A DNA stretch of 62,900 nucleotides, counting the filler, from Octopus bimaculoides (taxonomy: Eukaryota): assembly GCF_001194135.2 (NCBI RefSeq). It is 4 parts of 4 records of this genome, joined end to end, with 100 filler letters (N's around TTAATTAATTAA, not from the genome) between each part and the next. Parts side by side here need not be neighbours in the genome. Positions count along the whole stretch, not along the records: positions 31,703 to 58,793 come from NC_068997.1; 3 more parts are not named here. One strand, written 5' to 3'. Positions within the stretch are counted from its first letter, which is position 1, and each line of letters begins with the position of its first letter. Under the pieces are notes generated by a model. That model had not been told where the DNA came from. It saw only the letters and a list, made by a program, of their open reading frames with translations, and made no database searches. Positions 35,590-54,749 of the stretch are shown piece by piece. The position numbers and the translations under genes are program-made.

Positions 35590-35658
<69 letters not shown>

Positions 35659-35974
35659 GTCTGTCTGTCTGTTCTGGGTTTCTAACTGTCAAGGATGTCT
35701 TATAAAGCCATTCCCCTATACCTAAACCCTTAGTAATAGAGGGTATATAAGCAGTGACTTAGTGAAGTCTCAAAGTTGCCACTGATGACGTCTCAAAAAA
35801 GAATTGAATTTAGTTTCTTTGTTGGCGCTTCTAGAATCGTTAGAACGCCGGACAAAATGATTTGCGGTGATAAACTATATTCAAGTCAAGAACTGGGCTT
35901 CATGTAATCGATTATCCTTCCTGCCACAAAATTTCTGCCATTGTCATTATAGTAGACAGGATTTAAAAAAAAAA

Positions 35975-36039
<65 letters not shown>

Positions 36040-36276
36040 GTCTCGGTAATCTTGTGTCTCAATCCGGAATTCTGTGCTTAATACTTCACGTAAAATTTTA
36101 GAACTATCTGAAATGAAAACTAGACAAGCATTTTTTGTATCTACAGACACCATTCTACATTGACCAGAGAAATAGGAGCGACTTTTCAAATGCAGACGGT
36201 TTTGTCTATCTTTGGACTAAAACATAGAATACAAGTCAAGGAATGAAATAAACACAGAAGATTCAAATTTGTTTAC

Positions 36277-36534
36277 CGTCTCTAAACTTGGTCGGCACAG
36301 ATCTTCTCAACTGATAAAAATGGGTATTAGTTGCGTCTATTAGTATTTTCTCTGTTGAGTCATCTTCGTATAAAATACAGCTTGGACTCATCGTTCTGCT
36401 CACGAAGGATTTACATACAGAAGCTTCAAAACAATTCTTCGAACAGTTGAAGGTATCCACGTCAAGTGTCATCAATGTTTTACTGTCTTTCAGAGCACAG
36501 TTTTGTACTTTTATAAAATACTTCAGATATTCAA
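36277..36534 (-). CDS. Internal coding exon encoding one PAN/Apple domain (gene B, minus strand)
   Basis: Pyrimidine tract plus TTACAG acceptor and G|GTAAAC donor; 258 nt, phase 1-1, no stops. Translation EYLKYFIKVQNCALKDSKTLMTLDVDTFNCSKNCFEASVCKSFVSRTMSPSCILYEDD...HFYQLR fits the PAN core C-x3-C-x5-C-x2-F...C-x-L. Confidence 0.75.
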
Positions 36535-37059
36535 CTGTAACAAAGCCAGGCAAATTAAACAACCAAAAGAGAAAGACGAAAGTGAAAGATTATGAAAATA
36601 GATAATAATAAAGAAATAGAATATTAAATGTTTGACGATCAATATTGATATTTTTAACAGAAAGAAGTGATTAAGTTGTTACTACCATAGTGTAGGTACA
36701 AAGCATCTTGGGATATATTATCTGTTTAATGAAAATAAATGCGAATGAGTTTTTGAAGTTGTTTAATTAATTCTATTATTTAAATGATTCATATATTATG
36801 TTTTATAATGTTTAACGGTTGTCTGTTCTAAATTTGCCCCAATGTCAGCACTTAACAAAATACTTCCGTTGGAAATTATGTCAAGAATTCACCATCATAC
36901 GGCTGTATCTTAAAATCAGAATTTTAAATTTTCTTTCCAACAAATATATTTTGAAAAGGAAATTATTTTCCTGTATTGAACTTCTAAATCAAATGTTTGT
37001 GTAGTGATTTTCATAATTTTCATAGATATAGGATAATATATTGATATAAATCTACTCAC

Positions 37060-37095
37060 GTCCATTTCCAAATTTCATTGAGAAGTAGAAGAGAA
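37060..37095 (-). CDS. Candidate 36-nt micro-exon of gene B
   Basis: CATTGCAG acceptor and AC|GTGAGT donor; in phase 1-1 it reads (x)LFYFSMKFGNG and joins the PAN exon in frame (...GNG-L-EYLKY). It could be the end of a signal peptide. Confidence 0.4.
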
Positions 37096-38967
37096 CTGCA
37101 ATGAGAATTTATTTCATAAAATATTTCATATTTCACATTTACGTTGGACATTAATTTACAAAAAATAGAAATGAAAGGAATAAGAAAGAGAAGTGCTACA
37201 AGCATAATTCGATAACAAATATTACTATGATCACCACTACATCACCATAAAATTATCCATTGAAATAAGGAGGGAGAACGATAATTTTGAGAGGGATAGA
37301 AAGATAGAGAAACGAAGGTGTGATGAGAGATAAAGAGAGAGGAACAAATACAAAAGAAGTTAGTGAAGGTACGGCATATGTTAAGAGCAGGATGAAGTAT
37401 GAATGTAGTGAACCAAAAAGATTTTTTAATTAATCGAAATTATACACGTAATGAAAAGAAAAGTCAATTATCTGATTTAATAATAACCGTTGGAGATGGA
37501 AGGGAGAGAATTAGGAAATTGTAATTGATTAAAAATAATCAAGAGGTAAGCGGTGTGGAACGAATTTAATTTTTAGTAGGTTTGGGGTTATGTTTTGGTC
37601 TTATCAGATATTCGTTGGGAAATATAGCCTAATACGTATTTAATCCAGACCATAGAATATAATTTTGGTGTGAAAATTACTACTCACTGAGTAGGCACTA
37701 ATTTAAAACAAGACGATGTAAAGTTTTGTAGGACTTCTTTCTGCATGCACAACGCTATACAACCAAATATATAATGAAAGTTGACCACATCCTTTCCGGT
37801 GAATCATTCCTTGCAAAGNNNNNNNNNNNNNNNNNNNNNNNNNNNNNNNNNNNNNNNNNNNNNNNNNNNNNNNNNNNNNNNNNNNNNNNNNNNNNNNNNN
37901 NNNNNNNNNNNNNNNNNNNNNNNNNNNNNNNNNNNNNNNNNNNNNNNNNNNNNNNNNNNNNNNNNNNNNNNNNNNNNNNNNNNNNNNNNNNNNNNNNNNN
38001 NNNNNNNNNNNNNNNNNNNNNNNNNNNNNNNNNNNNNNNNNNNNNNNNNNNNNNNNNNNNNNNNNNNNNNNNNNNNNNNNNNNNNNNNNNNNNNNNNNNN
38101 NNNNNNNNNNNNNNNNNNNNNNNNNNNNNNNNNNNNNNNNNNNNNNNNNNNNNNNNNNNNNNNNNNNNNNNNNNNNNNNNNNNNNNNNNNNNNNNNNNNN
38201 NNNNNNNNNNNNNNNNNNNNNNNNNNNNNNNNNNNNNNNNNNNNNNNNNNNNNNNNNNNNNNNNNNNNNNNNNNNNNNNNNNNNNNNNNNNNNNNNNNNN
38301 NNNGACTGCGCTCACAAACGAGAATACAAAAATGAACCCGACTGCTCTCAAAAATTAAGTGAAAAACAGGAAAAAATAATCCAGGCTCCTTGCCCCGTGT
38401 CTAATCGATCCCAAACTCTAATCCCCTCGTACCAGTCATGAGGCCAAACATCCCTGAAAGTTGCATCCGAATCCATCCAGCGGTTCTTAAGATATCTGTT
38501 TCACCGCCAAACAAACAAACACGACTGGAAACAATACCTTCGCCTTCGGTAAGTACAAGATATGATAAAAACACAAACAAAATCCTAAAAAGGTATATCA
38601 CGGTTATTCTCAGTCCCAAAGAATCACAGCGAAACAATGTGACACGACACACGCTAAACAACAACTATCCAATAAAATAGACAACATATATTCATATATA
38701 TATATATGTATGTATATATATGCGAAAGAGTAACATTTGAAAAGAAAACTACAAAATGAAATGCATCCAAGGATATATTTATTCATGCACAAATATGACA
38801 TATATATATATATATATATCATATCATATCATATCGGACATTTAATATTCCATCATTTCATTATATATTATATTATATTATAATAATATTGTAATAAAAC
38901 GTGAAAATCAGAAAAATTTGGAATTTCTTAGAGTAATATATTCTTCTATACACAATAATACACACTG

Positions 38968-39056
<89 letters not shown>

Positions 39057-39612
39057 AAAGGTGAGTTTTAGTGTGGTCTCAATCGTGACGGATAAATCTT
39101 TAAACAATAAGAATCTTCATATAATAAATTTATGATAAAATGTTTACATACAAATATTGTGAAGGTAATTCCACTGCAGCATCCCGTCTGTTTTCTAGGT
39201 AGAAATGACTGTCAAGAAGAAGAAGATATTGCTATTTTAAATCTACCTTCTTTATGAACGATAATCCTTATATGAACTTCCTATCGATTTATCAATAATA
39301 GCTGACAAGTGAAGTTATTGTATTTATGCAATGCACCTTTTGAAAGTAATCCTGATCAAATGATATCGACTTGCAACTTAAGATGGTGTGAATCCACAGA
39401 CATACACATCCGTTTATATATATATATATATACTCAATATAAAGTATAAGAGAAATTGCTTATAACAGGTAACTTCTACACGCTAGAAGACAGTAAAAAA
39501 CGACCGAAAACCNNNNNNNNNNNNNNNNNNNNNNNNNNNNNNNNNNNNNNNNNNNNNNNNNNNNNNNNNNNNNNNNNNNNNNNNNNNNNNNNNNNNNNNN
39601 NNNNNNNNNNNN

Positions 39613-41050
39613 AATCGGAAGGGGGTAAGGGCATGTCGTGTGCTTGTGTGTTTGTTTGTTGATGGTTGTTGATTATCTGCTTGTGGTGTATGTGATGTGC
39701 GAGAAAGGGAATTAGTTTTTGTATTGTCTTTTGCTTTTACAGTTTCCTTAGTTCTTGTAGTTGTTGTTTGTGTTTTTTCGGGTACATTTGTTGGTGTAGG
39801 CGGGTTTGGTTTGTGGGATTCTTCTGTCTTGCTCCTTTTGCTCGTTCTTTGTGTGGGTAGTAGAGGTCCTTTTTTGGCTGTTTTTTCTTCTTGTTGTTTT
39901 TTGTTATCTGTTGCTGTTGGGCAATCTTTTTTGAGGTGCCCTTCGATGCCACACAGGTAGCATCGAGGCCTTCTACCTTCTACCACAACGTAGAGGGTGT
40001 GGCCGTCTGGCAGCTCAATTTGAGTTGGAATTTCTTTTGATTCTTCCTGTGTAATCTGTAATAGGACATCGAATTTTTTTCCATTCCAGTCTTCCTGCTT
40101 TAATGCAGTAGTTTCCTTCCATGTGATAACAAATAGCTGATAACAGCCATTGTGGTTCCACTTCTGGAGGGACNNNNNNNNNNNNNNNNNNNNNNNNNNN
40201 NNNNNNNNNNNNNNNNNNNNNNNNNNNNNNNNNNNNNNNNNNNNNNNNNNNNNNNNNNNNNNNNNNNNNNNNNNNNNNNNNNNNNNNNNNNNNNNNNNNN
40301 NNNNNNNNNNNNNNNNNNNNNNNNNNNNNNNNNNNNNNNNNNNNNNNNNNNNNNNNNNNNNNNNNNNNNNNNNNNNNNNNNNNNNNNNNNNNNNNNNNNN
40401 NNNNNNNNNNNNNNNNNNNNNNNNNNNNNNNNNNNNNNNNNNNNNNNNNNNNNNNNNNNNNNNNNNNNNNNNNNNNNNNNNNNNNNNNNNNNNNNNNNNN
40501 NNNNNNNNNNNNNNNNNNNNNNNNNNNNNNNNNNNNNNNNNNNNNNNNNNNNNNNNNNNNNNNNNNNNNNNNNNNNNNNNNNNNNNNNNNNNNNNNNNNN
40601 NNNNNNNNNNNNNNNNNNNNNNNNNNNNNNNNNNNNNNNNNNNNNNNNNNNNNNNNNNNNNNNNNNNNNNNNNNNNNNNNNNNNNNNNNNNNNNNNNNNN
40701 NNNNNNNNNNNNNNNNNNNNNNNNNNNNNNNNNNNNNNNNNNNNNNNNNNNNNNNNNNNNNNNNNNNNNNNNNNNNNNNNNNNNNNNNNNNNNNNNNNNN
40801 NNNNNNNNNNNNNNNNNNNNNNNNNNNNNNNNNNNNNNNNNNNNNNNNNNNNNNNNNNNNNNNNNNNNNNNNNNNNNNNNNNNNNNNNNNNNNNTATGTG
40901 TGGTTGCTGTTTTGATGACGTTCTTAGAAATTTCTTTTTGTGTGCGCGTGCAGTTTTCATTCTTTTTCTTATCTAGCGTTCCAAGGCTAGGGAAGTGATG
41001 TTCGAAGAACGGACTGGAACAGCGTTCCAAAACAATGTTTCTCGACATTT
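39613..41050 (-). mobile_element. LINE ORF1-like (gag-like) zinc-knuckle fragment interrupted by a gap
   Basis: IELPDGHTLYVVVEGRRPRCYLCGIEGHLKKDCP (CCHC knuckle) followed by a K/T/Q-rich low-complexity tail. Confidence 0.7.
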
Positions 41051-41234
41051 TCCCAAATGCCGAGAAAAATTTATGCCCCTAGGGGCCAATTCCTCCCTTC
41101 GAAAAAATACACAAATGAAGCTTGGGTGCTTCGCACAGATTATATGAAAAACTTTTAAACAAATGTGGGCAATATAAGGTAAAAAAAAAAAAGGTTTACC
41201 TCTGCAGCCGATGTGACAGCACGTCCGTCAGTAG

Positions 41235-41316
<82 letters not shown>

Positions 41317-41364
41317 AGAGAGTGAGAGAGAGAGAGAGATCTGATCAACCACATAATTCAGTCA

Positions 41365-42250
41365 AATCCGAAGTCCCAATTTTTGCGGATAAAACGGATT
41401 TGTACAGACACATGGAATTTCTGGAAACATGCAAATGCTCTTGTACACCATTATGTCAAACTTGGTTACAGTGAATCACGATCAAAGGAAATAGCAAATG
41501 AGATAGCTAAGATTAGCAAAGAAAGTCTAACTTACACGAATAATTTTAGCAAACAACTTTAGTACAATTTGTGACATAATTCTTTTAGCAAATAACTGAC
41601 ACAGAAATTTCGCTGGCATTTCAAAAGTGTTGCATGAAAGTTACCGGCTGTTGCAGAAACATATCCTCGTTTCGAACAGATATTTCCTCAGCCGCCTATT
41701 GTAGTCTTTAGATGAGATAAGAATATAAGAGAACTATTAACCTCTTCTTCTGACTCAAAGAACACTAACCGTGGAGTATCTGCACGCTGTTACTTAAAAA
41801 ACAGCCGCAAGAGAGGTAAAGCTTGTTCATTGTGTAACAACATGTATCAAGTGAATTCCATCAGGAATCATAATAGAAATGTTATGACTTATACATAAGG
41901 TGGGACATGTAGAGATTCCCATTTGGTGTACGCGGCAGAATGCGCAAAACACAACTTGATTTATGTTGGTTGTACAAGAGAACAATTAAACAAAAGATTT
42001 AATGGGCACAGATATGACGTCAGGCACAATAACAGTAGTTCGACAGAACTTGCCGAACATTTTGCTACAAACGGCTGCAATTTTGAAAAAGACTTGAAAG
42101 TGCGTATTCTCAGAAAATATTCTGAATTTGCTACACTTTCAATACTCAAAATGCATGAGAAGAAATATGTTTGCGTGTTATTAACATCGCGCCTTGGAGG
42201 ACTAAAATGACAGAATTCCATCATATTTACACAAAACTGTTTGATTAAAT
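41365..42250 (+). mobile_element. Penelope-like element 3' fragment (thumb/linker plus GIY-YIG)
   Basis: SQFLRIKRICTD...KLGY, EQIFPQPPIVVFR.DKNIRELL, and LVYAAECAKHNLIYVGCTREQLNKRFNGHR. Confidence 0.75.
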
Positions 42251-42690
42251 ATTTTTCTTCTCTATTCTTTTCGTTTTCCTTCTTTTTATTTCTTTTTGTT
42301 TTTACCAGTTGTAAACAGCTTCAGATCGTTCATATAAAACAGATGATTTACTATAATATTGTACATTTTGAATCCATACCTGGTGTTACACAGTTCGTTT
42401 GAGAGTGGGATAAATGGCATGCAAAAAAGTAATGGGTTGAAGGACTCACCTTAAGAGATATCTCGTTTGATGTTGATGTTGTCAGATTGGCTAATCCCAT
42501 TTCTATGGTTTAGAAGGAGACGTGAATTTCACTTCGCCGTGGTACCCTGTGTTAATTTGGAAACTACGGAATTTATTTATGCCACCGTAAGCTGTTTTCC
42601 TCTGCTTCGATACAGTCCTGGCAACTGATCAAAACTCTCCCACCCTTTCGTCTGATCTAGGTATCCATTCTCGTTACTTCTCTTTTTTGC

Positions 42691-42761
<71 letters not shown>

Positions 42762-42892
42762 CTTTACCCAATACTTTTTATTCATCCATTATTTCTCATT
42801 AATCTAAAACAATAAAACTCTTCATAAAATCATCCCACTACCATCACGAAAACCGAACCCAAAACGTTCATTTATCTGTTTTATTCTTTCAG

Positions 42893-43123
42893 GAAGATGC
42901 CCTGTGGATTTCATTTACAACGGGTATCTTCCTAGCAACAATGATTTGGGTGTCACATATGATGTTAATTATACGCAGTGTTTCTACAAATGTGAAGCAG
43001 AATCAACCTGTCAATCGTTTGACTACAACTTTCATTTGAAAGGTTGCTACATGTCATCGAGTAATCATACTAAAGCCGTTTTGCGTTGCATCAAAACTGA
43101 CATTTACACTGAAATAAACGGAA
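42893..43123 (+). CDS. Coding exon, PAN/Apple domain 1 (gene A)
   Basis: TTTTATTCTTTCAG acceptor and A|GTAAGT donor; 231 nt, phase 1-1. Translation RCPVDFIYNGYLPSNNDLGVTYDVNYTQCFYKCEAESTCQSFDYNFHLKGCYMSSSNHTKAVLRCIKTDIYTEING has six Cys with the apple spacing. Confidence 0.85.
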
Positions 43124-43635
43124 GTAAGTGCAAATTCGCTTTATATTTCGTTATACTTTTCTTCTATTTAGACCCTCTTCATCCACGTGCTTCCTCCTGA
43201 TTTTTTTAGTCCATTCCCATGGACTATATATGTGTGTGTGTATGTGTGTGCGCGCGCGTGTATGAGTGCAGGTGTGTGTGTGCGTGCATGTGTGTTGTGT
43301 GTGTGTGTGCGTGAGTGTGCATGTCAACGCGTTTTATTGTGTATGTGTTTGTCGCACAATACCACTTGACAATGGTGTTACTGAGTTTACGTTCACGTAA
43401 CTTAGCGGTTTGGCAAAAAGAACCGAAAAAAGAATTACAGTCTTGGCTGGATTCGTTCGACAAAGATTATTCGACGCGGTTAATGATGTCGAATGATTCG
43501 ACCCCAGCCCTTAATGATGTTATCATTAAAGGCAGGGAACTGTGTATTAGTGTCCCGGCTGGTAACTGAGGAAGAATTAGGGCCCTTCTCTGCCTGTCCT
43601 ATGCGTACGTTTTTTAATATTTAATGCATTTTTTC

Positions 43636-43720
<85 letters not shown>

Positions 43721-43810
43721 NNNNNNNNNNNNNNNNNNNNNNNNNNNNNNNNNNNNNNNNNNNNNNNNNNNNNNNNNNNNNNNNNNNNNNNNNNNNNNNN
43801 NNNNNNNNNN

Positions 43811-43897
<87 letters not shown>

Positions 43898-43898
43898 T

Positions 43899-43945
<47 letters not shown>

Positions 43946-44418
43946 CGTTAATCAAATATATTCAATGAGATTATGATATTCTGAATTTTTCATAATTTCT
44001 CTTGGTAGGAAAATATCTAAAACATTAAAGGTATTTAGACATTTAATAAGAGCGATTATATATTATATTATAAAATAAGAACAGGAAAATTACATCAAAA
44101 AATCATCACAGAAGATATACGTCCAAAATATTATTGTATTAATAGATAAAAATATAAATGTATGATTAAATAAAAAGTTGAAATTTAAAAATATCTTACA
44201 ATAGTTTCATGAATGTATTACACTTAGAAATGAAATCTAAAATTTATAATCATTATTAGGTAATACATCCACTCATCAGAGAGAAAGATGGTGAATTTTC
44301 GTGTAGCCAATCGAATGCTATTTAAAAATATATGAAAAAGATGTTGCTTAAAGATGTTGTTTAAAAGTTACTGGCGTAGGTATGCGTTGGTACAATTATT
44401 ATTTTATAATATAATATG

Positions 44419-44463
<45 letters not shown>

Positions 44464-44545
44464 GAATTTTAATATTAAAGAAGCCATGAATGATATTAAG
44501 TCCACGAGAGAAATAGGAAACTATTTTATTTTCATTCCATTTCAG

Positions 44546-44641
44546 AACTTTGGAATAACCTCAACCAGTCCCTTACACTGGAGAAGATTGACTCTGTTGG
44601 ATGTGATATAAGAATTTTCGACTCTTATTATTTCGTTGACA
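44546..44641 (+). CDS. Linker exon of gene A (absent from the ORF track)
   Basis: TTTTATTTTCATTCCATTTCAG acceptor and A|GTAAGA donor; 96 nt, phase 1-1, open: (K)LWNNLNQSLTLEKIDSVGCDIRIFDSYYFVD. In frame with both neighbouring PAN exons. Confidence 0.65.
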
Positions 44642-44883
44642 GTAAGACTATTTTTTATTGTTTACTTATTGTGTTCTTTGTTTCTGTTCCTTGTTCCTCA
44701 TCGTTAATTAATTGATCTTCTGTCTCCAGTTCTTGCAGTAAGAACTGAAATTAATAGATATCCCTTTCTTTCTCATCGCATGATTATTTCTACTTAGAGT
44801 CTTAATTCTTAGTTAAATAGATTAGCACTAAATTAATAATTAACAGCCTTTCAAAAGGATGTCGTAAAACTAATCCACAAGTA

Positions 44884-46142
44884 CGCGGTGGTATCAAAAA
44901 CTTCCCGGACTAGTTACGTTTTGAAAAATAACTTGTTTACCTAAGTTTTCGCATCACATCCTTCGAAATAGTCACCTTGCGCAACAATACACTAGTCTCA
45001 GCATTCCTGCCACTTTTGGCTTGGAAGTAGTTTTCCTTAAGCGACTCGGAAACCTTCTGCGTTTCAATCTGGATTTTGACAATGGTGTTCAAACGGTGGC
45101 CTTCAAGCTGCCTTTTTTCATCTTGGTGAAGAGATGGAAATCCGCAGGTGCTAAATCTGGTGAATAGGACAGGTGCGGAAGCGTAACCATGTTGTTTTTG
45201 GTGAGAAACTCACGAGTAAGGATGCATTGTCGTCGTGAAGTTCCTCGCGCTTCACAAATCCGGTCGCTTTAGCCGAATGTCCTCTCTAAAACGCTTCAAA
45301 ACACCGAAGTAGAACTCTCGACAGATGATCTGACCCTGGCGGTCGAACTCTAAATGCTCAATACCTCAGATTTTCATTGAGCTGCGGATCTGTCGGATTG
45401 AGTTCAGTCGTGGAGATGAAGGACTTTTCCATTGTGACGATTGTTGCTTCACCTCAGGATCGTACTAGTAGACTCAACTTTCGGTACCGGTGATGCTCTT
45501 CGACATGAAGTATGGGTCATCAACTGCAGGCTGACGGAGATCTTGACAAACTTCGGCGCGATGTTCTTTCTGTTCAGTGGTCAACAGTGGGGAGAACTTG
45601 GCAGAGACACGCCGCATGTTCAATTCAGACATTAAGATTGTCTGCACAAATCCATATGACAGACCAACCACATCAGCAATGTCGTTGATTGTCTACCGAC
45701 GATCTTCATTCACAAGATGATGGATTTTTTTCCACATCTCCAGAAGTGACGCTCGTCGCAGATCTTCCAAATCGCTCATCGTCTTCCAGGGATGTTCTTC
45801 TGCTTTTGAAGAGCCCGTGCCACTCTACATATTGCGTACAACCAATTGCCTCGTTAACGTAAGCATGCAGAAGCATGCTCAATGTCTCTGTAACAGACGT
45901 CCCAAGTTTAATTCACGTTGGCTTTTTGTTCTACGTTCTTGTCCATGACGAAATCGCAGACTACAGCGTACACGTGATGATAAAAACACAAATTTCACAA
46001 CTTGCGATAAGTAAACACAGCGGTGTCACTCAGCACACTGCCTCATAACCATCACTGCTAGCTCTCACTGCACACTTAACCGTGTGCTGCCATCTGTAAA
46101 CACACTATAGAACTAGTCCGGTGATTGTTTGATACCACTTTG
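44884..46142 (-). mobile_element. Full-length but inactivated mariner transposon in an intron of gene A
   Basis: Imperfect ~31-bp TIRs (CGCGGTGGTATCAAAAACTTCCCGGACTAGTT / AACTAGTCCGGTGATTGTTTGATACCACTTTG), TA on both sides, and motifs RRVSAKF.PLLTTEQK, SITGTES (TGDE) and PYSPDLAPADFHLF. Confidence 0.85.
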
Positions 46143-46573
46143 TACATTTAAAATCTGGCAGATGGGTTAATATTAATCCTCGCTGTCATTAAAAATCTCA
46201 ACACGCTTCATTACTAACTTGCTCAGAAATACCCCCAATAAATCTCGCTGGTAATACGAGAACCTCTCTACCTCAAAGATAACCAGCCACTTACCCCTTC
46301 TCCCTCTCCCCTCATACATGCTATTTCAACAGCCAGATCCCTCATCAATTATTATTCCCAGTCCTTCCTTTCTAGATTAGGCAACACTCAGGAATTCACT
46401 CCCTACTCACACTAACCTAAAGATGCTCAAACGGAACATCAATAACATCGATCTATCGAATCAATAGACCACATCTATTCGTTTCCCTTGTACCTTGTCA
46501 ATGAAGAGAAATCATTTCATTTATGTTGCTATATTTCTTGTGTTTTTTCTTTCATATCTTTTCTCTGTTGCAG

Positions 46574-46764
46574 AAAAAGAAATTAATGGCCAGACAGCTT
46601 ATTCAACTTTTTCCTTCAAACAAAATCCACATCACAACCTTGTAACCGAGGCCCAAATGGATGCTCACTCGGTTCTGGATTGTTCACGTTTATGTATGAT
46701 ATCTTCTACATGTATCGCCTTTTCAAATACTAACACTAAGTGCCTACTAAAGAAACTGATCTGA
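46574..46764 (+). CDS. Terminal coding exon, PAN/Apple domain 2 plus stop (gene A)
   Basis: Long pyrimidine tract plus TTGCAG acceptor, phase 1. Translation KEINGQTAYSTFSFKQNPHHNLVTEAQMDAHSVLDCSRLCMISSTCIAFSNTNTKCLLKKLI* has the C-x3-C-x5-C-x2-F-x6-C core. Confidence 0.8.
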
Positions 46765-46879
46765 ACTTTAATGGAATTCACCTGAAAATTATTTACTTTT
46801 CAATGAAATGTGAGCAAGATCTCAACGGATCATGTTCGCATATAATAATTATATGAAATAGAATGTGTGTTTCTTTGTG

Positions 46880-46885
46880 AATAAA
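46880..46885 (+). promoter_or_regulatory. Candidate polyadenylation signal of gene A
   Basis: AATAAA about 115 nt after the TGA, followed by T-rich sequence. Confidence 0.5.
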
Positions 46886-49800
46886 ATCAATTTAATTCAG
46901 ATATTTCTTTTCTTTATTTCTATTGCTAACGTTTTTCGTTTTAAATTACTCTTCTCTTATAAATTCATTCACACATTTGAAGAGTTATAAAATTATTTAA
47001 TTTACCCGATCACCAATAAAGCACTTGGGTATTATTTTATCGACCTTCAAAGAATGAAACTCTAAGTTAACCTGGACAGCATTTGATCTTAAAACATAAC
47101 TGGTCTCAACTAAATACCACAAACAGTTAAATCGAATCTTTAATGATTCTTACCTATCATCTAAATAATATATCAAATAAAACATTTGCGTTTGGTTGAT
47201 TTCTTTTGAGAAGTGAAAGGATTCGCAATGCAAACAAAACAAGAAAATTGCATTAAACCTGCGTCACAGTAGCACCAGACGTGGCATGCAGACCATCATA
47301 TAACTTGATTGATATTTGCATTGCGTTTTTATTCTACTCATCTGTTCTTCGAAGTCAGTGTGCGCATACGTATTGAGAGTTCATTCTTCTTTTTTCTGGT
47401 TCCGACTCCAAACTGTTTACAGATCATAACCATCTCACCAACTGCATTCGTGAGGAGCACTTCACGCTCCGATGGTGTGAAAAAAACTGATGAAGGTAAC
47501 ACCGAAAACTTTTCTGAGGAACATGGTAAACGATTTACGGGAATCAATGTTTGTTCATTCGAACGTAGCAAAGCACCAACAATCTTAGGTAATATTATTG
47601 TTAATTTGAGTTTTAGTTCTGGTCCCTCATTAACTATTTAAGCTGGCTGATCTTTATCAAGGATTACAAAACCAAATTGAAGTTTTGCGTTTCAGCATCT
47701 TCTTTGCATGTAACGTCGGTACAGGTTAAATGGAAGTCCGAAACCAGTAACAGGAAAAACGAAATTTACTCGCAGTTCGTTCACAAATACAGCAGCTTCT
47801 TGAGATCTTTTTTGATTACTGGAGGGTAATACATAGCAGTGAAAAACGAATTTGCAATACTACTCGTTTAGTTTTCATAGGTTAAGTTTTAAATTATTGT
47901 TTTTTTTTTCTTTTTTCATAGTTTAGTGAAGAGGAGAGATGGCGGTGGATATGGCGTTTGCAAGACTTTATGGATATTGGTGAGACCGATATGATTAATG
48001 CTTAGTTTGAAGATTTGTGTGTTGACATCTGTAAAGAAAATGTGATCAGAGATTGAATTTCAGTGGCGACCCAATCCAAGCAGATTTAGTTTTTAAAAAG
48101 CTCTAAGCACAGGCAGATATTTTATATAAATGATCATTTGAGTTTTAATTTAATAAATCAAATTTAAAGTCAACTTCTGAATGTGATTGAAAAGTCAAAT
48201 AAATAAAAAAGTTAGCTGTGAAAATACAAACTACACAAAAGTGATTCTCTTTTCGGTGATTTGTCGGAAAACGAAGGAGGGTGTCTTCAAAATTCAGGCT
48301 TTCATCACATCATCTATTCATAATAATTGGGCATAAATTATCCGGTTTATTGTCTACCACGGAAATCAACAGATACGACTTGATCATCCACAGCTTGAGA
48401 AAGTATTCCTTCACAGCCTGCCGTGTACTTACAGGCAGTGTTACATTTTCTTGAAGCAGTTCGATCAGTTCAATCGAGGAATCCATAGAGCGATTCAAAA
48501 ACTCAAGTAAATCGGTCAATGAGATCAAAATGTGTCACTTCCACCCGATGAGACGCTTTGCACAGTCGAATTCATTCTGACTTCCGGTTGTCCAAATTTA
48601 GCTGAAATGTGTCTGCTATGAATTTGAGAGAATGTTCAGAAAATGGGAATTTAAGGATTAAGATAAGAGAGGCTCATCATTATACTGTCACTTTATGCCG
48701 AAAATCGGTGTTGGAGCTCTAAGTAAATCTGGTTTAACATGACCGTCTCCTGGTGAAAATTGATGAAAGGTCCTCTATTATAATAGAAACATTTGTCTTT
48801 AATTTGCCCTCCCATGACTTAATAACCTCACTGAAATGAGAGAGAATGTCCATAATAAGCTCATAATGAACAGCATAGCACGGTACCTGCTGACTGACCC
48901 ATCGTGTATAGGAGAAGATTTTTTCCTCTACTGGTTGTCTTCGTTTTTCATCCTGTAAGTACTTGTTGTACTGATGCACTCTGAATCGATCCATAAACAG
49001 GTAAAGTTACTGCTGTCTGACGAAAAATTCCCCGATAGCCTTTTCATTTTTGTTAAGGAGTTACCCACAGCTAGATTCAGTTGGTTCAAATACGTGGTGC
49101 AGAACGTCTAAGAGCAGTTCAATTTTTTAAATGACCTTTGTTTCATTCAAACTTAATGTGAAGTTTAAGCCTGAGCCAAGTCTTAAGCTAGTAATTCTTT
49201 GATTACTGATGCCATGGTTTAAAGAAAAATCATTGCGTTTACTGTGATATAAGTATTTTGCATTTCGTGATCCCATTATTGTCCCCTTCTTGACAAGTGA
49301 CCGTGAATAGCATCACGTGTTTCTTTCCAAAATGTTTGATATTTCCTCCATACACAACCGGCTGAGATATAGATTTGGTACATTTTACCCCAATGCATAC
49401 TTCCGTTCGAGAAATCTTATGTGCTGCAAAATCAATATACTCTATTTTCCGGTATGCTGTACATATTGATGTGATTTACAAAGCCCTGGATTCGAACTGC
49501 GACAACTGGAGTCAAACAATGTTTATGAAACTGTTCTGAGTTTTGGTTAAAATGATTTATTGATCTGGTTGTTGTTAATGTTTTCAAGATGTTGACGTTA
49601 AATCTGTTAAATCAAGACTGGGCTATTGATTACTACTCTAATCAATAGCCCTATTGATTACTACCGGTCATATGACCTTCCTTAAATTCCTCTTTTCTCT
49701 CACTCCTTTATATTTTCTTCTTTTCTCTTTGTTTTAATATTTATATCTCTCTACATCCTCCTCTCCTTTTGTGCTCTCTACACATTCTGAGTGAATATTC

Positions 49801-51649
49801 CATGCGTCAACATGTCCCTTCTTGCGACAATGTAACCTTTAATTTAATGAAGATATCCTTGGCCTGAAGACTAGCCTGCGCTATGCAACTCGCCTGGGTA
49901 TTTACCACTTCTGAGGTTCCGCTCGCTATGAAACATATGTAGCCCGGATCTTATTTGCTTCATTCCGTAACTCTTATTCGCACACCCGGCAACCCTGGTC
50001 ACCTACTGTGAAATATAAATGACTGTGGTGTAACTCCTGTTTATGAGGGAGAAACTCCTTGTTATTNNNNNNNNNNNNNNNNNNNNNNNNNNNNNNNNNN
50101 NNNNNNNNNNNNNNNNNNNNNNNNNNNNNNNNNNNNNNNNNNNNNNNNNNNNNNNNNNNNNNNNNNAGTGTTTATATCTATTCAATACATCTTATGAAGG
50201 TACTCCGGATGAAAAGGTATTGACATAACGCTTGAGATGGCATACGAACACTAAATAATACATTTATATATACATATGTATGGTTATGTGTGTCTGTGTG
50301 CGTGCGTGCGTGCATGTGAATGTATGTGTGTTTGTTTGCATGTACTTACTACACTCAAGTTGTGAAAAATACCAATAATTTTGTCAAAACAAAGAAACCA
50401 TTGATACATTTCATATCTAAAGACATTGCCGTTTTTTATTTTTAAAAAAATTCCAATAATTCTTAGATGTGACATTTCCCGCTGTGAGTTGAAACTAAAG
50501 GGTCACAATCATTTATAAAGTATATTGTCACTTGTGTTATTAAAACAATGACAGCTATTTCATCATAGATTATATCGCACTCAATCAACTGTTTTAAGAT
50601 CATCAAAAAATGCGAGCTCCTTCAACATGTAGCAATAACAATCTCAGATGAAATATTTCTTCTTGCTTTGGACTTAGAAATTAAAGTCTTGAAATAATTT
50701 TCTCTTCTCGTCTCTCGCGTAGTTTCCAGTCATCCCTTTGTCACACACATAATGATAAGAAATATCAATATGTAACTGGCGTCTTGTATTCTTATATCAT
50801 TTACTAAGGACAAACCATAATGGTTGAGGCGTGTTACGACGGGCAACTATGTCTCTCTCTAACACTTCTTTCTCCTTACTTTCTCTGAAAAAGACGGATT
50901 CTTGTTGCAAATGCACTGTCAGCCAGTATAATAGCATGGTGTCTGTTATGTATTCTTTTTAATTTAAGCGAGACATCACTCCAGGTACACTCACACGTCT
51001 CCCATGAAAATGACGTTTTACTTCATCATGTACAACTTCCCTGTCCTTCTTCCTTCACTGCAAACAATCTGATCTATTTCCAACGAGTCATCTGCATGTA
51101 ACATTATCAAGATATGACCATATGGCAATTGATTCTTCCGATACTCATCAGTGAGCAAATGAGCAAGCAACTCTATCGAAAACGTGTCTCGTTTTAACGT
51201 CATTCAAAAGTTATTTTAGTTTTAGTTTGAAACACCTTGCTCCCAGATCTGGTCTTTTTGAGAGATTTTCTTCATGAAATAAGTTATCCTTAATTTCTGG
51301 TCACTTTAGATTACATGCTATAAAATGAAAATATCAGGTGAGCTATGTTGACTTACTAAAGCCATTGTCTTGTAATACCGTTTTCGCATGTTTCTTGGAA
51401 ATTCTTGGAATGAAGACGGGAGAATAAGTGCGTGTGTCGAGCCTGAAAACCAGCATAATGCGCACCGTTATTTAAATGAATAGCTAAGCTTCTCTAAAGT
51501 TTCACATTCAATATTTGTTGTTGGTTTCTGAATTTGTAAGCAGAAGTCTACTGCGCAATGCTGGGAGATTTTTTCCTCCTTGAATAATGGGATTGAACTC
51601 CTTATGTTTGACTACTCTGCTGCAACATTGTGATATTTCATCGATTGTG

Positions 51650-52700
51650 AACATTTCCTGTCATTTGTTGTTGCCATCTTGGTTCACGGAAAGGAGAAAA
51701 ACCGCCTTTGTGGTTTTGCGCGTCGCACGTAAGATGTAGGTCTTCAAATTGTTGACGCTGAAGTGTGGTGAAACATTGATTCTTGTTTGAAGTATGCCCC
51801 ATAAAAAGTAATCGAGAAGGTTGAGATCTGGGCTATTACCGGGACAGATATTCGTCCTCACAAAAAATGGCACATTCTTACCAAGGAAGACCCGTGTTGC
51901 TTTTCACCCATAACATGGTGCAGAATCCTGGATAAGCACCTCGTTGTCAAGCCCAAACTTCTGCTCCATCCAAAACAACAGAGAGTTCTTCAGGATGTCC
52001 AGATACTCCTTTGTGCCGACCTTCAAACCAGACTCAATGAAGTGTGGGTCCATGACACTTTCATCACTCGCCGCGGTTCCAAATACCACCATAGAGCCAG
52101 GGTTCTTAGTATTAAACACAAGGAGGACGCCAGAAAGGTTGTATGCAATCACTCAAGAATTTCTGCGATTCATCTCAACGTCCACAGTGAACTTCATTTC
52201 GTCCACAAACACAAGAGTTTTTTTTTCCTGCACCTTGATGCTTGACGAATGGCAGAAGCTTTGGGCATCTCTCGGCTCTGATTGCTTTGGCCCCTTGGCT
52301 GTTAGGTGGGTGACGGTGTCATGGAACATAGTTATGCCAAGGTTCCTTTTCACAACCCTGGACACCGTGGAAAGGGACACATTGCCTCTGTTTGAAAAGA
52401 GTTGTCATGGATGCGGATGGGTTGGTTTCAACCGAGCGTTTCAGGTCAGTGAGGAACTTTGGTTTGCGCTTGGAATCACTTCGACTTTTGCGTTCTTTTC
52501 TATCAATCTTTACCACTTCTTTAAATTATTTATACATGCAATAAACTGTTGCCTTTGGAAGTTTCGTCAACTTAACAATTTTATTGGCAATGTGCCCGGT
52601 GCATGCCAAAACAATAATGGAGGAACGATTCTGTTGTTCCATGACTTTCTGTTGTTGAATCAGTTCGCTATTTACCTGAAAAATGAAGAGCAGGATAATA
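51650..52700 (-). mobile_element. Frameshifted Tc1/mariner-superfamily (maT/DD37D-like) transposase
   Basis: N-terminal HTH (KLTKLPKATVY; SLSTVSRVVK), VFVDEMKFTVD, VLIQDSAPCYG and GNSPDLNLLDYFLWGILQ across several frames. TIRs not identified. Confidence 0.8.
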
Positions 52701-53006
52701 TTTTCAAGCAAGCAAGGTTTTGTCAAAAGAATGAAACACACAAGCATCCGAACATTACATATATCCAGAATATGACATAATATAATGCAAAAGAAATTCA
52801 TCATCCAGCACAGTCTTTTCTCAAAAGTCAAACCCAATGCAGATAATCATCCAAGGGGTGTCATCCAAGAGTAGCGCCCCTTTATTGTGAATTTCTGTGA
52901 ACTTCCGTGCTCTCACTGAAAATGGAGACGAACACCATATCTCCATGTGATCGGCTTGAAAATTTGTTAGATATTAATGTATTTTCTCAACATGAAACCA
53001 ATGGTG

Positions 53007-53133
53007 GCCTTAATACATACATACATACATACATACATACATACATACATACATACATACAAACAAACAAACAAACATGCATACATACATACATACATAC
53101 ATACACACACACATACATACATACATACATACA

Positions 53134-53164
<31 letters not shown>

Positions 53165-53200
53165 TACACATACATACATACGTACTACACATACACATCC
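53007..53200. repeat. (TACA)n tetranucleotide microsatellite
   Basis: Directly visible. Confidence 0.95.
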
Positions 53201-53537
53201 GCATATATAGGTTAGAGACAGGTGTTCTCTATATAGAATACACATCCTTTTTTAAACTGCATCCTGGCAATACCAAAAAAATGTAAAATTCTCCAATGTA
53301 AAATTCTCCAATGTAAAATTCTCCAAGTAACTATCATTATTCCGATCCACCAAACCCTCAGAAACAGCTGTTGGACTCGTAAAACTCTACCCATTTAACT
53401 CCTGATATCATTTATATTCTCTATGTCAGATTAATTTTTATCCATACACATGTACATTTTTTGTATTAAATGTATTTAATATTCTGTGTAAATCGACTTG
53501 CTTAACTTGCTTGTCATTACATTTACTCGTATGTATG

Positions 53538-53576
<39 letters not shown>

Positions 53577-54404
53577 NNNNNNNNNNNNNNNNNNNNNNNN
53601 NNNNNNNNNNNNNNNNNNNNNNNNNNNNNNNNNNNNNNNNNNNNNNNNNNNNNNNNNNNNNNNNNNNNNNNNNNNNNNNNNNNNNNNNNNNNNNNNNNNN
53701 NNNNNNNNNNNNNNNNNNNNNNNNNNNNNNNNNNNNNNNNNNNNNNNNNNNNNNNNNNNNNNNNNNNNNNNNNNNNNNNNNNNNNNNNNNNNNNNNNNNN
53801 NNNNNNNNNNNNNNNNNNNNNNNNNNNNNNNNNNNNNNNNNNNNNNNNNNNNNNNNNNNNNNNNNNNNNNNNNNNNNNNNNNNNNNNNNNNNNNNNNNNN
53901 NNNNNNNNNNNNNNNNNNNNNNNNNNNNNNNNNNNNNNNNNNNNNNNNNNNNNNNNNNNNNNNNNNNNNNNNNNNNNNNNNNNNNNNNNNNNNNNNNNNN
54001 NNNNNNNNNNNNNNNNNNNNNNNNNNNNNNNNNNNNNNNNNNNNNNNNNNNNNNNNNNNNNNNNNNNNNNNNNNNNNNNNNNNNNNNNNNNNNNNNNNNN
54101 NNNNNNNNNNNNNNNNNNNNNNNNNNNNNNNNNNNNNNNNNNNNNNNNNNNNNNNNNNNNNNNNNNNNNNNNNNNNNNNNNNNNNNNNNNNNNNNNNNNN
54201 NNNNNNNNNNNNNNNNNNNNNNNNNNNNNNNNNNNNNNNNNNNNNNNNNNNNNNNNNNNNNNNNNNNNNNNNNNNNNNNNNNNNNNNNNNNNNNNNNNNN
54301 NNNNNNNNNNNNNNNNNNNNNNNNNNNNNNNNNNNNNNNNNNNNNNNNNNNNNNNNNNNNNNNNNNNNNNNNNNNNNNNNNNNNNNNNNNNNNNNNNNNN
54401 NNNN

Positions 54405-54472
<68 letters not shown>

Positions 54473-54711
54473 GAATAGTTAGTTTAAAGCATTGTGTGGA
54501 ATATATTATATAAAATTAGTGTGTAAGGCCGGAACAATGCGAAATAAATCCAAGGCAGATCACAAGGAAACAGGCATGTGAATCAATCGTGACTTACCCT
54601 GCATTCGATATTTCAGGGTTATGACTACAGGAGTTAGCGAATGTTGCAAATGTAACCCTCTTCTTATATATAAAAATACATCCTATAAATATATACATAG
54701 ACAAACAGACT

Positions 54712-54749
<38 letters not shown>

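What the first reader, a model, noticed from the sequence alone, without database searches (positions are those of the whole stretch)
42893..46885. Hand-assembled multi-exon gene for a small tandem PAN/Apple-domain protein, including an exon the ORF track misses
Seen: three exons with canonical GT-AG sites, all phase 1, splice into one open frame: PAN1 (6 Cys), a 32-codon linker (1 Cys), PAN2 (4 Cys, ends at the stop), then AATAAA. N-glycosylation sequons NYT, NHT and NQS are present. Established: PAN/Apple modules mediate protein-protein and protein-carbohydrate binding (plasminogen/HGF N-domain, prekallikrein/factor XI apples, apicomplexan microneme adhesins), and phase 1-1 exons typify shuffled extracellular modules. 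Inference: a secreted product whose visible C-terminal part is PAN-only, with no protease or TM domain after PAN2, so a candidate lectin-like, immune or adhesive protein of a lineage-expanded family. The start/signal exon is not visible and may lie in a gap or further upstream.
Basis: partly seen in the sequence, partly recalled or inferred. Interest (0 to 1): 0.75.

Follow-up and report, generated by a model that had tools for sequence, protein, structure and literature searches.

The report
Octopus secreted apple-domain protein gene
The three exons are real and form the back two-thirds of an already catalogued but unstudied Octopus bimaculoides gene for a small secreted protein built only of three PAN/Apple binding modules; its front end is missing because a 10-kb piece of the assembly is turned the wrong way round.

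Summary
Exons 42893-43123, 44546-44641 and 46574-46764 have GT-AG borders, are all phase 1 and splice into one open frame. RefSeq's partial 119-aa model LOC106882685 (Octopus bimaculoides) uses the same junctions. The 90-N gap lies in a microsatellite inside an intron and hides no exon.

Full-length relatives in four octopod species show the family plan: signal peptide, PAN0, PAN1, a short exon, then a C-terminally truncated PAN2, about 280 aa in six phase-1 exons. So the protein has three apple domains, not two. Pfam, a confident AlphaFold model of the O. sinensis ortholog and Foldseek all support the PAN/Apple fold.

The family sits in same-strand tandem arrays. PAN1 is highly divergent between paralogs, while both gene ends are homogenised. 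dN/dS against the ortholog is about 0.8.

The block 39613-50066, bounded by two exactly-100-N gaps, is inverted relative to both flanks when compared with two gapless congeners. A family-type 5' exon set (ATG 39182, 37095-37060, PAN0 36534-36277) lies on the minus strand. It belongs either to the next paralog (favoured) or to this gene.

Function is inferred only: a secreted lectin-like recognition protein. The finding is ordinary and mildly interesting.

The parts
42893..43123 (+). Exon 4 of the family plan: the second apple domain (PAN1), 6 Cys, phase 1-1, 231 nt
   Evidence: Splice sites and frame. Pfam PAN_1 33.5 bits against a cut-off of 21.4. 76% aa identity and 87.7% nt identity to the O. 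sinensis ortholog exon. The exon plus 150 nt on each side is 86% identical to L006/L007 but only 61-69% to the other paralogs.
44546..44641 (+). Exon 5, 96 nt, phase 1-1: short helical spacer plus the invariant Cys and first strand of the third apple domain
   Evidence: Junctions identical to RefSeq model P0003. Present in every paralog locus. Secondary structure of the ortholog model.
46574..46764 (+). Exon 6: core of the third apple domain (PAN2, 4 Cys), ending at TGA 46762-46764
   Evidence: 94% nt identity to the ortholog. The C-terminal '...C.LKK..' ending is conserved in the family.
46880..46885 (+). AATAAA polyadenylation signal, 116 nt after the stop codon
   Evidence: Conserved in L006, L002 and L003 within a highly conserved 3'UTR.
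43721..43810 (.). Assembly gap (90 N) inside the intron between exons 4 and 5, within a compound (AC)n/(TG)n microsatellite
   Evidence: the flanks are collinear with the gapless orthologs and no exon is missing.
44885..46141 (-). Decayed mariner-like transposon in the intron between exons 5 and 6 (TA target duplication, about 28-bp terminal inverted repeats)
   Evidence: Present at the same site in L006, L007 and L003 and absent from L002, L004 and L005.
39613..50066 (.). 10,454-bp block carrying exons 4-6, bounded by two gaps of exactly 100 N (39513-39612 and 50067-50166). It is inverted relative to both flanks when compared with O. sinensis and O. vulgaris.
   Evidence: Window 41235-49591 aligns on the + strand to L006/L007, while 35998-39432 and 50167-58793 align on the - strand. 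Gap list.
41236..41316 (+). (GATA)n tract followed by the right-flank sequence of the PAN0-PAN1 intron of the ortholog. It marks where this gene's intron 3 resumes after a retroelement fragment.
   Evidence: The motif AATTCAGTCAAATCCGAA is found only in the window, L006 and L007.
39152..39182 (-). Family-type exon 1 (ATG, MLQWNYLHNI, donor GTATGT), on the opposite strand. It belongs either to the neighbouring paralog (favoured) or to this gene.
   Evidence: ATG 39182 is exactly where a separately annotated 355-aa minus-strand gene model starts.
37060..37095 (-). Family-type exon 2 (36 nt, second half of the signal peptide, FLFYFSMKFGNG), opposite strand
   Evidence: The acceptor TTGCAG and donor GTGAGT are conserved in all seven paralog copies.
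36277..36534 (-). Family-type exon 3 (PAN0, first apple domain, 258 nt, phase 1-1), opposite strand
   Evidence: tblastn E values of 1e-41 to 1e-48. Pfam PAN_1 23.2 bits against a cut-off of 21.4. Splice sites.

Best explanation
The three exons are exons 4-6 of LOC106882685 of Octopus bimaculoides (chromosome CM046617.1, about 30.05 Mb).

The gene belongs to an octopod-expanded family of secreted proteins of about 280 aa and about 30 kDa. These proteins consist only of a signal peptide and three PAN/Apple domains. The first (PAN0) has the 4-Cys core. The second (PAN1) is a full 6-Cys apple domain. The third (PAN2) is truncated at its C-terminus and has its first Cys on a separate small exon. 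Every exon is phase 1.

Shown: the gene structure, the fold class, the restriction of close relatives to octopods, the tandem same-strand arrays, and a mosaic pattern in which PAN1 and its flanks are very divergent between paralogs (53-69% nt) while the 5' and 3' blocks are kept at 83-90%. Also shown: fast protein evolution (overall dN/dS 0.79 against the ortholog) with no indel or stop in the exons and all 16 mature-protein Cys of the joined sequence conserved.

Inferred: the product is secreted and works as a lectin-like or adhesive recognition protein. Its stable disulfide-bonded apple domains would bind a carbohydrate or protein ligand. PAN1 would be the paralog-specific, ligand-defining module and PAN2 the conserved scaffold.

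The RefSeq model is truncated to 119 aa because the 10.45-kb block holding exons 4-6 is inverted relative to its neighbours, most likely through a scaffolding error at two 100-N joins. The gene's own 5' exons then most likely fall in the join next to the block. The 5' exon set visible on the minus strand at 36.3-39.2 kb more likely belongs to the next tandem paralog.
For: Identity and structure:
- the window is base-for-base identical to GCA_001194135.2 CM046617.1, and P0003 is 100% identical with the same junctions.

Family plan:
- the order signal, PAN0, PAN1, short exon, PAN2 is seen on one strand in L002-L007.
- Divergent paralogs P0028 and P0022 and Argonauta P0020 (24-35% identity) keep the same plan.

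Fold:
- Pfam PAN_1 49.3 bits in 3 stretches for the joined 280-aa sequence; PAN0 alone 23.2 bits.
- AlphaFold2 model of the ortholog P0001 with 18 sequences: pLDDT 87.5, pTM 0.76.
- Foldseek: prekallikrein and factor XI apple domains at E about 1e-7, SML-2 and MIC4 at about 1e-5, and the HGF N domain at rmsd 2-3 A over about 85 residues.
- PDB sequence search: best hit 2yil, E 3e-4.

Distribution:
- 185 representative proteins at E<=1e-3. 17 of the 20 I traced are from Octopus or Argonauta.
- Two clusters lie on the same chromosome.

Evolution.

Secretion:
- Hydrophobic N-termini ending in GNG in the paralogs.
- The mature Cys count is even in 6 of the 7 full-length members examined.

Inversion:
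- One search gives the strand of each aligned block against two gapless congeners.
- The breakpoints coincide with the two exactly-100-N gaps.

Assignment of the minus-strand exons to a neighbouring paralog:
- The S2 start (50167-50281) is the 87% ortholog of the O. sinensis promoter segment. The same segment next to the minus-strand ATG is only about 70% identical.
- The exon-1 region is 72.8% identical to the ortholog.
- The post-(GATA)n motif is shared only with L003, whereas the block's own motif is shared only with L006/L007.
- The L005 intergenic region is collinear with window 46143-50022 (+) followed by the reverse complement of 39283-35678.
- A separate 355-aa model starts at ATG 39182.
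Against: - No expression, secretion or binding data could be obtained, and no paper on this family was found.
- The structural model is of the O. sinensis ortholog (81% identical over exons 4-6), not of the window's own protein.
- PAN2 alone is below the Pfam thresholds.
- dN/dS near 1 in PAN0 and 0.64 in PAN1 is also what relaxed constraint would give.
- The signal peptide encoded by the minus-strand exons is less hydrophobic than in the paralogs (maximum 9-mer Kyte-Doolittle score 1.44 against about 2.7) and lacks basic residues.
- The order in both congeners is upstream block, then exon 1/exon 2/PAN0, then this block. A single (GATA)n tract in O. sinensis has its left flank in the minus-strand piece and its right flank in this block. 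Both facts fit the view that the minus-strand exons are this gene's own.
- The sequence left of 31703 and the 355-aa model could not be retrieved.
Confidence: 0.8

Rival explanations
1. The minus-strand exons (ATG 39182, 37095-37060, PAN0 36534-36277) are this gene's own 5' exons. The true order is upstream block (50167-58793 reversed), then the 5' exons, then block 39613-50066. Joined to exons 4-6 they give one intact 280-aa, six-exon, all-phase-1 reading frame.
For: - This is the order and orientation in both gapless congeners.
- The joined frame is open, with 16 Cys at the same positions as in P0001.
- The left flank of the single O. sinensis (GATA)n tract matches the minus-strand piece, and its right flank matches the block.
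- No PAN1, short-exon or PAN2 sequence lies on the minus strand below 36277 within the piece.
- O. sinensis and O. vulgaris have no paralog within 7 kb downstream of the ortholog.
Against: - It needs the block to be both flipped and moved.
- The promoter-proximal segment next to ATG 39182 is a diverged second copy (about 70%) of the segment at 50167-50281, which is the true 87% ortholog.
- The exon-1 and intron-1 regions are 72-83% identical to L006, against 86-89% for the rest of the locus.
- A 270-bp segment and the post-(GATA)n motif are shared with L003, not with L006.
Confidence: 0.3
2. The inversion is real in O. bimaculoides. Exons 4-6 are then cut off from promoter, signal peptide and PAN0, and form a recently orphaned 3' gene fragment, that is a pseudogene.
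For: - The assembly as deposited shows this arrangement.
- RefSeq could only build a 119-aa model starting at an internal Met.
- dN/dS is high.
Against: - Both breakpoints fall exactly on 100-N gaps.
- Exons 4-6 have no stop and no indel over 519 nt at about 12% divergence, while the neighbouring introns are full of indels.
- dN/dS is 0.39-0.64 in these three exons.
- Splice sites and AATAAA are intact.
Confidence: 0.08
3. The family is not a binding or recognition protein. It is instead a structural component of an extracellular matrix or mucus, as PAN-domain proteins are in nematode apical matrices, with no specific ligand.
For: - PAN domains occur in matrix proteins (the C. elegans matrix paper listed) and in biomineral proteomes.
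- Giant multi-PAN octopus proteins of 1730 and 2643 aa are related to this family.
Against: - The protein is small and has no polymerising domain such as ZP or VWD.
- The middle domain differs strongly between paralogs while the ends are homogenised. That pattern suits ligand diversification better than a bulk structural role.
Confidence: 0.15

Closest known systems
Octopus sinensis LOC118766713 (XP_036366256.1, P0001) and its O. vulgaris counterpart (CAI9735614.1, P0014): the orthologs
   Same: - 81% aa identity over exons 4-6.
- Same exon sizes and phases, and similar lengths for the two introns between PAN1, the short exon and PAN2.
- Unique intron sequence is 86-89% identical.
- The same mariner insertion is present.
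- All 16 mature-protein Cys are conserved.
   Different: - The O. sinensis protein ends ...KKLVDL because of a 1-bp difference before the stop.
- The sequons NYT and NQS are lost there.
- The O. sinensis gene uses an exon 1 lying 18 kb upstream, because the proximal copy carries a 2-bp insertion.
- All of its exons lie on one strand.
Octopus bimaculoides LOC106868906 (P0006, 276 aa): the nearest full-length paralog, about 53 kb away on the same strand
   Same: Same six-exon, three-apple plan. PAN0 is 87% and PAN2 84% identical at the aa level. Same C-terminal ending.
   Different: PAN1 is only 43% identical, and the short exon only 50% with a 3-residue deletion. It lacks Cys35 and Cys174 and has no mariner element.
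Apicomplexan apple-domain lectins: Sarcocystis muris SML-2 (PDB 2yil) and Toxoplasma MIC4 apple domains (4a5v)
   Same: They are small secreted proteins or segments made only of tandem apple domains. They give the best PDB sequence match (E 3e-4) and Foldseek E values of about 1e-5. SML-2 was crystallised with a galactose analogue, which gives a working model for carbohydrate binding.
   Different: Only 14-17% identity. They have two domains rather than three and no truncated C-terminal domain. They come from unrelated organisms. Galactose-binding residues were not examined here.
Apple domains of human plasma prekallikrein and coagulation factor XI (6i44, 7qox, 5i25)
   Same: These are the top structural matches (E about 1e-7, about 280 aligned columns across several apple domains). 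PAN1 has the six-Cys apple pattern.
   Different: They have four apple domains followed by a serine protease. The domain arrangement differs (rmsd about 15 A overall). The octopus protein has no protease.
N-terminal PAN domain of HGF and plasminogen (3hmr, 1gmo, 4dur)
   Same: Single-domain superposition gives rmsd 2-3 A over about 85 residues. PAN0 and PAN2 share the 4-Cys core.
   Different: In HGF and plasminogen the PAN domain precedes kringle and protease domains. HGF's PAN domain binds heparin and MET. There is no sequence-level relationship beyond the fold.

Membership tests
PAN/Apple domain superfamily (Pfam clan PAN; PF00024 PAN_1) | Profile-HMM match above the curated gathering score | tested here: met
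   PAN1 exon 33.5 bits and PAN0 exon 23.2 bits, against a cut-off of 21.4. The joined protein scores 49.3 bits with 3 stretches. PAN2 alone is sub-threshold (PAN_2 17.3 against 21.1).
PAN/Apple domain superfamily | Core of four Cys (C2-C5 and C3-C4) around a central helix: C-x3-C-x5-C-x(9-11)-C | tested here: met
   Cys53/57/63/75, Cys138/142/148/160 and Cys254/258/264/274. The PAN1 and PAN2 core Cys are invariant in the close paralogs, and Cys142 and Cys148 are nearly invariant across the wider family. The disulfide pairing itself was not tested.
PAN/Apple domain superfamily | Fold: an alpha-helix packed on a curved antiparallel beta-sheet | tested here: met
   AlphaFold2 model of ortholog P0001 (pLDDT 87.5) shows strand-helix-strand-strand three times. 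Foldseek finds only PAN/apple structures at the top. The test was run on the ortholog, not on the window's own protein.
Apple subtype (factor XI / prekallikrein type) | Six Cys, including the C1-C6 pair that ties the N and C termini of the domain | tested here: inconclusive
   Only PAN1 has six Cys (111 and 174 in addition to the core). PAN0 and PAN2 have a C1-like Cys (35 and 205) but no C6. Cys35 and Cys174 are both absent in P0006 and P0028. The pairing is unknown.
Octopod three-apple secreted family (LOC106868906 / LOC118766713 type) | Architecture: signal peptide, PAN0, PAN1, short Cys-bearing exon, PAN2 ending about 6 residues after the last Cys; six phase-1 exons | tested here: inconclusive
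   Exons 4-6 fit exactly. Exons 1-3 of the right type lie nearby but on the other strand, and their assignment to this gene is uncertain.
Octopod three-apple secreted family | Orthologous position and sequence in other Octopus species | tested here: met
   Unique intron and flank sequence is 86-89% identical and collinear with L006 and L007. The PAN1 region is 86% identical to them against 61-69% to the other paralogs.
Carbohydrate-binding apple lectins (SML-2 / MIC4 type) | Demonstrated sugar binding and conserved binding-site residues | not testable with these tools
   Only fold and weak sequence similarity were obtained. No binding data exist for this family.

The most novel reading that the evidence does not exclude
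The octopod three-apple genes form a diversified recognition repertoire. They sit in tandem arrays in which gene conversion keeps the signal/PAN0 and PAN2 ends alike, while the middle apple domain (PAN1) is held highly divergent and evolves fast. This would give a panel of secreted binders with different specificities for innate immunity, mucus or skin defence, or gamete and egg recognition, in animals that lack adaptive immunity.
Probability: 0.15. Interest if true: 0.6.

Novelty: new member of a known kind. Interest (0 to 1): 0.3.

Why it matters
For genome annotation: the case shows that one gene of the chromosome-scale O. bimaculoides assembly is split or truncated by a misoriented 10-kb scaffold. 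RefSeq keeps a 119-aa stub, and next to it a 355-aa model that starts at a family-type ATG. The O. vulgaris model P0002 fuses two tandem paralogs. Anyone counting or comparing this family across cephalopods would be misled by these models.

For biology: the family is a so far undescribed, octopod-expanded set of small secreted proteins made only of apple domains, with a variable middle domain. It is a reasonable candidate for lectin-like recognition. Nothing here suggests a new fold or a new mechanism.

Tried and rejected
1. I first read an in-frame TAA in the 'signal exon' at about 37100 as a nonsense mutation. Alignment of seven paralog copies showed that the TAA is intronic. The exon is only 36 nt, starting after TTGCAG, and the ATG lies on a further exon at 39182. 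Rejected.

I used the ortholog P0001 instead.

3. The first AlphaFold run, with 5 sequences, was useless (pLDDT 46). A run with 18 sequences gave pLDDT 87.5.

4. I tried to retrieve the 355-aa minus-strand model, to reach sequence left of 31703. Two homology searches returned only O. sinensis fragments. An exhaustive exon-chain enumeration timed out. Look-ups of other O. bimaculoides paralogs landed at 48.9 Mb.

5. I considered whether the retroelement pieces beside the two (GATA)n tracts are two halves of one LINE. That would prove that the minus-strand exons belong to this gene. The RT-bearing piece (about 33.4-34.9 kb) shows no endonuclease or ORF1 upstream, and no full copy was found in the loci. 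Inconclusive.

6. Orthology of the exon 2-PAN0 block cannot be decided from identity. All paralogs are 83-90% alike there.

7. The P0005 tblastn hit at 49213-49536 is not a second short-exon/PAN2 copy. Only a 35-residue tail matches.

8. Literature searches for octopus or cephalopod PAN/apple proteins and for the accession numbers found nothing relevant.


Full report
**What is in the window**

The finding's piece (31703-58793) is base-for-base identical to Octopus bimaculoides chromosome CM046617.1 of assembly GCA_001194135.2, around 30.05 Mb, including its gaps. Loci L001 and L002 are not flagged as reversed, so the window's + strand is the record's + strand.

**Check of the observation**

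The three exons are as described.

| Exon | Length | Left border | Right border |
|---|---|---|---|
| 42893-43123 | 231 nt | CAG acceptor | GTAAGT donor |
| 44546-44641 | 96 nt | CAG acceptor | GTAAGA donor |
| 46574-46764 | 191 nt | CAG acceptor | ends at TGA |

- All three are phase 1. Joined, they read RCPVDF...CLLKKLI* without a stop.
- AATAAA at 46880 is conserved in the ortholog and in two paralogs, inside a well conserved 3'UTR.
- The PAN1 exon alone passes Pfam PAN_1 (33.5 bits, cut-off 21.4). PAN2 alone does not.
- A search of 5.8 billion proteins returned nine Octopus proteins at E values from 3e-90 to 2e-26.
- One of them is XP_014788936.1 / LOC106882685 of O. bimaculoides, a 119-aa model. 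UniProt already calls it an Apple domain-containing protein.

**The assembly gap**

- The 90 N at 43721-43810 lie in the intron between PAN1 and the short exon, between (AC)n and (TG)n.
- Both flanks align in the same order and on the same strand to the gapless orthologous loci of O. sinensis (L006) and O. vulgaris (L007).
- The O. sinensis intron has (CA)n followed by (GT)n at the same place.
- The six O. sinensis exons translate exactly to P0001 with nothing missing between PAN1 and the short exon.
- The gap therefore has no bearing on the frame.

**The full family plan**

Full-length relatives are P0001 (O. sinensis, 282 aa), P0006 (O. bimaculoides, 276 aa) and P0007. They read: signal peptide (MLQ..IFLFYISLTFGNG), PAN0, PAN1, a 32-residue exon, PAN2, ending about six residues after the last Cys.

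- Exon mapping in seven loci of three species shows six exons, all phase 1, always on one strand. Where two genes are visible they lie head to tail.
- The signal peptide is split over two exons of 31 and 36 nt.
- Much more divergent paralogs (24-35% identity) and an Argonauta hians protein keep the same plan and the same abrupt C-terminus.

**Fold**

- Pfam finds three PAN_1 stretches in a joined 280-aa sequence (49.3 bits), and PAN0 alone passes the cut-off.
- With 18 family sequences the AlphaFold2 model is confident (pLDDT 87.5, pTM 0.76).
- It shows the strand-helix-strand-strand core three times.
- The third domain starts within the 'linker' exon. That exon also forms two short helices.
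- Foldseek returns only PAN/apple structures at the top:

| Structure | Match |
|---|---|
| Prekallikrein and factor XI apple discs | E about 1e-7 |
| Sarcocystis SML-2 and Toxoplasma MIC4 | E about 1e-5 |
| HGF N domain and plasminogen PAN | rmsd 2-3 A over about 85 residues |

- A profile search of PDB sequences gives SML-2 as the best hit (E 3e-4).

**Distribution and evolution**

- An exhaustive profile search of 1.84 billion representatives gave 185 hits at E<=1e-3.
- Of the 20 I traced, 17 are from Octopus or Argonauta. The others are an annelid protein and an oomycete protein, both long multi-PAN proteins, and one ENA entry of unknown source.
- O. bimaculoides has at least two clusters on this chromosome, at 30.0 Mb and 48.9 Mb.
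- Between paralogs, the PAN1 exon with 150 nt on each side is 53-69% identical. The exon 2-PAN0 block and the PAN2 block are 83-90% identical. This mosaic is best explained by gene conversion at both ends.
- Against the ortholog, overall dN/dS is 0.79 with dS 0.146:

| Module | dN/dS |
|---|---|
| PAN0 | 1.3 |
| PAN1 | 0.64 |
| Short exon | 0.39 |
| PAN2 | 0.42 |

- PAN0 runs at dN/dS between 0.35 and 1.4 in all paralog pairs.
- The exons carry no indel or stop, and all 16 mature-protein Cys are conserved.
- The Cys count of the mature protein is even in six of the seven full-length members examined. Cys35 and Cys174 are lost together in two of them. This hints at non-canonical inter-domain disulfides, which is an inference.

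**Where the 5' end is**

A family-type 5' exon set lies on the minus strand:

| Exon | Coordinates (minus strand) | Content |
|---|---|---|
| 1 | 39182-39152 | ATG, MLQWNYLHNI |
| 2 | 37095-37060 | FLFYFSMKFGNG |
| 3 | 36534-36277 | PAN0 |

- All three have canonical splice sites.
- Joined to exons 4-6 they give an open 280-codon frame.
- ATG 39182 is exactly the start of a separately annotated 355-aa minus-strand gene model that runs leftwards past 33051.

Comparison with L006 and L007 shows three blocks:
- Window 41235-49591 aligns on the + strand at 82-89% identity.
- Window 35998-39432 aligns on the - strand.
- Window 50167-58793 aligns on the - strand and lies upstream of the gene in the congeners.

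The block 39613-50066 is thus inverted relative to both flanks. Its two ends are the only gaps in the piece of exactly 100 N, the conventional size for joins of unknown length (my inference). A scaffolding error is far more likely than a real inversion. The exons' integrity argues the same way.

**Whose exons are they?**

For 'this gene's own':
- The congeners' order is upstream block, 5' exons, then this block.
- A (GATA)n tract that is single in O. sinensis has its left flank in the minus-strand piece and its right flank in the block.

For 'the next tandem paralog':
- The start of the right-hand flank (50167-50281) is the 87% ortholog of the promoter segment just upstream of the O. sinensis proximal exon 1. 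The same segment beside ATG 39182 is a different copy, only about 70% identical.
- The exon-1 region is 72.8% identical to the ortholog, and the 723 bp upstream of exon 2 is 82.9% identical. The rest of the locus is at 86-89%.
- A 270-bp segment and the motif after (GATA)n are shared with L003 only, while the block's own motif is shared with L006/L007 only.
- The intergenic region of the O. vulgaris tandem pair (L005) is collinear with window 46143-50022 followed by the reverse complement of 39283-35678. A simple in-place flip of the block would therefore give two head-to-tail genes.

I put about 0.6-0.7 on the neighbour-paralog reading and about 0.3 on the same-gene reading. Under the first, this gene's own exons 1-3 lie in the unsized join next to 39613. 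I could not reach the sequence left of 31703 or the 355-aa model.

**How it most likely works**

Shown: the protein is made only of three disulfide-rich apple domains behind a signal-peptide-type N-terminus in its relatives, with no other domain.

Inferred:
- It is secreted and acts by binding, as the other small apple-only proteins do. SML-2, for example, was crystallised with a galactose analogue.
- The paralog-specific PAN1 domain would set the ligand, and PAN2 with the short exon would form the conserved scaffold.
- Which ligand, tissue and process are involved is unknown. No paper on the family was found.

**Verdict**

The gene is already in RefSeq and UniProt as an uncharacterised stub. 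It is a new member of a known kind of domain family and belongs to an undescribed octopod expansion. The most useful by-products are the diagnosis of the misoriented scaffold and the family's mosaic pattern of evolution.

Noticed in passing
window 39513-39612, 50067-50166 and the block 39613-50066 between them: A 10.45-kb block bounded by two exactly-100-N gaps is inverted relative to both flanks when compared with the gapless O. sinensis and O. vulgaris loci. This is probably a scaffolding orientation error in the chromosome-scale O. bimaculoides assembly. It splits or truncates gene models: a 119-aa stub on the + strand and a 355-aa model on the - strand.
   Followed up: yes
window 44885-46141: A decayed mariner-like transposon with TA target-site duplication and about 28-bp inverted terminal repeats. 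It sits at the same intron site in L006, L007 and L003 but not in L002, L004 or L005, so it marks a sub-clade of the family that predates the species split.
   Followed up: partly
window 41923-42210 (+): An ORF with a GIY-YIG endonuclease domain (Pfam 24.6 bits), probably a Penelope-like element remnant. It lies in intron sequence that is shared at 86% identity with O. sinensis.
   Followed up: no
window 39613-41048 (-) and 33370-34890 (+): Retroelement fragments: an ORF with a CCHC zinc knuckle at the left end of the inverted block, and LINE-type reverse-transcriptase remnants left of the 73-N gap. Each lies beside a (GATA)n tract (41236-41316 and 35590-35672). I could not show whether they are two halves of one insertion.
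   Followed up: partly
window 51559-55636: This segment is absent from the O. sinensis and O. vulgaris loci. It is an O. bimaculoides-specific insertion carrying minus-strand ORFs (51661-52380) that look by eye like Tc1/mariner transposase fragments; the one I scanned against Pfam had no hit. It also contains an 828-N gap.
   Followed up: no
L006 about 10001 and about 23867 (O. sinensis ortholog locus): There are two copies of exon 1. The proximal copy has a 2-bp insertion that breaks the phase. The annotated gene uses the distal copy, 18 kb upstream of exon 2.
   Followed up: partly
L005 10001-51098 (O. vulgaris): Gene model P0002 (298 aa) is a chimera that fuses exons of two tandem paralogs spanning 41 kb. 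Models P0005, P0008 and P0009 carry non-PAN C-terminal tails from downstream sequence.
   Followed up: partly
window 49430-49536 (+): This stretch encodes ...IFRYAVHIDVIYKALDSNCDNWSQTMFMKLF, about 90% identical to the C-terminal tail of the O. sinensis model P0005. It is a conserved downstream ORF fragment of unknown meaning, either an alternative 3' exon or a repeat.
   Followed up: no
PAN1 exon regions of window, L002-L007: The family shows a mosaic pattern. PAN1 with 150 nt on each side is 53-69% identical between paralogs, while the exon 2-PAN0 and PAN2 blocks are 83-90% identical, both within and between species. This suggests gene conversion at both gene ends around a divergent middle domain.
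   Followed up: partly
L008 and L009 (CM046617.1, 48.90-48.99 Mb): A second cluster of more divergent three-apple paralogs lies on the same chromosome. It has three same-strand genes in L008 and one on the opposite strand next to a SNF2-type helicase gene in L009.
   Followed up: no
window 49651-50022 (+) and 50167-50954 (-): Two different promoter-type segments face each other across the 100-N gap. The first matches the region just upstream of exon 1 of the second O. vulgaris paralog in L005. The second matches the upstream regions of L004 and L006. The arrangement makes no biological sense as assembled.
   Followed up: partly
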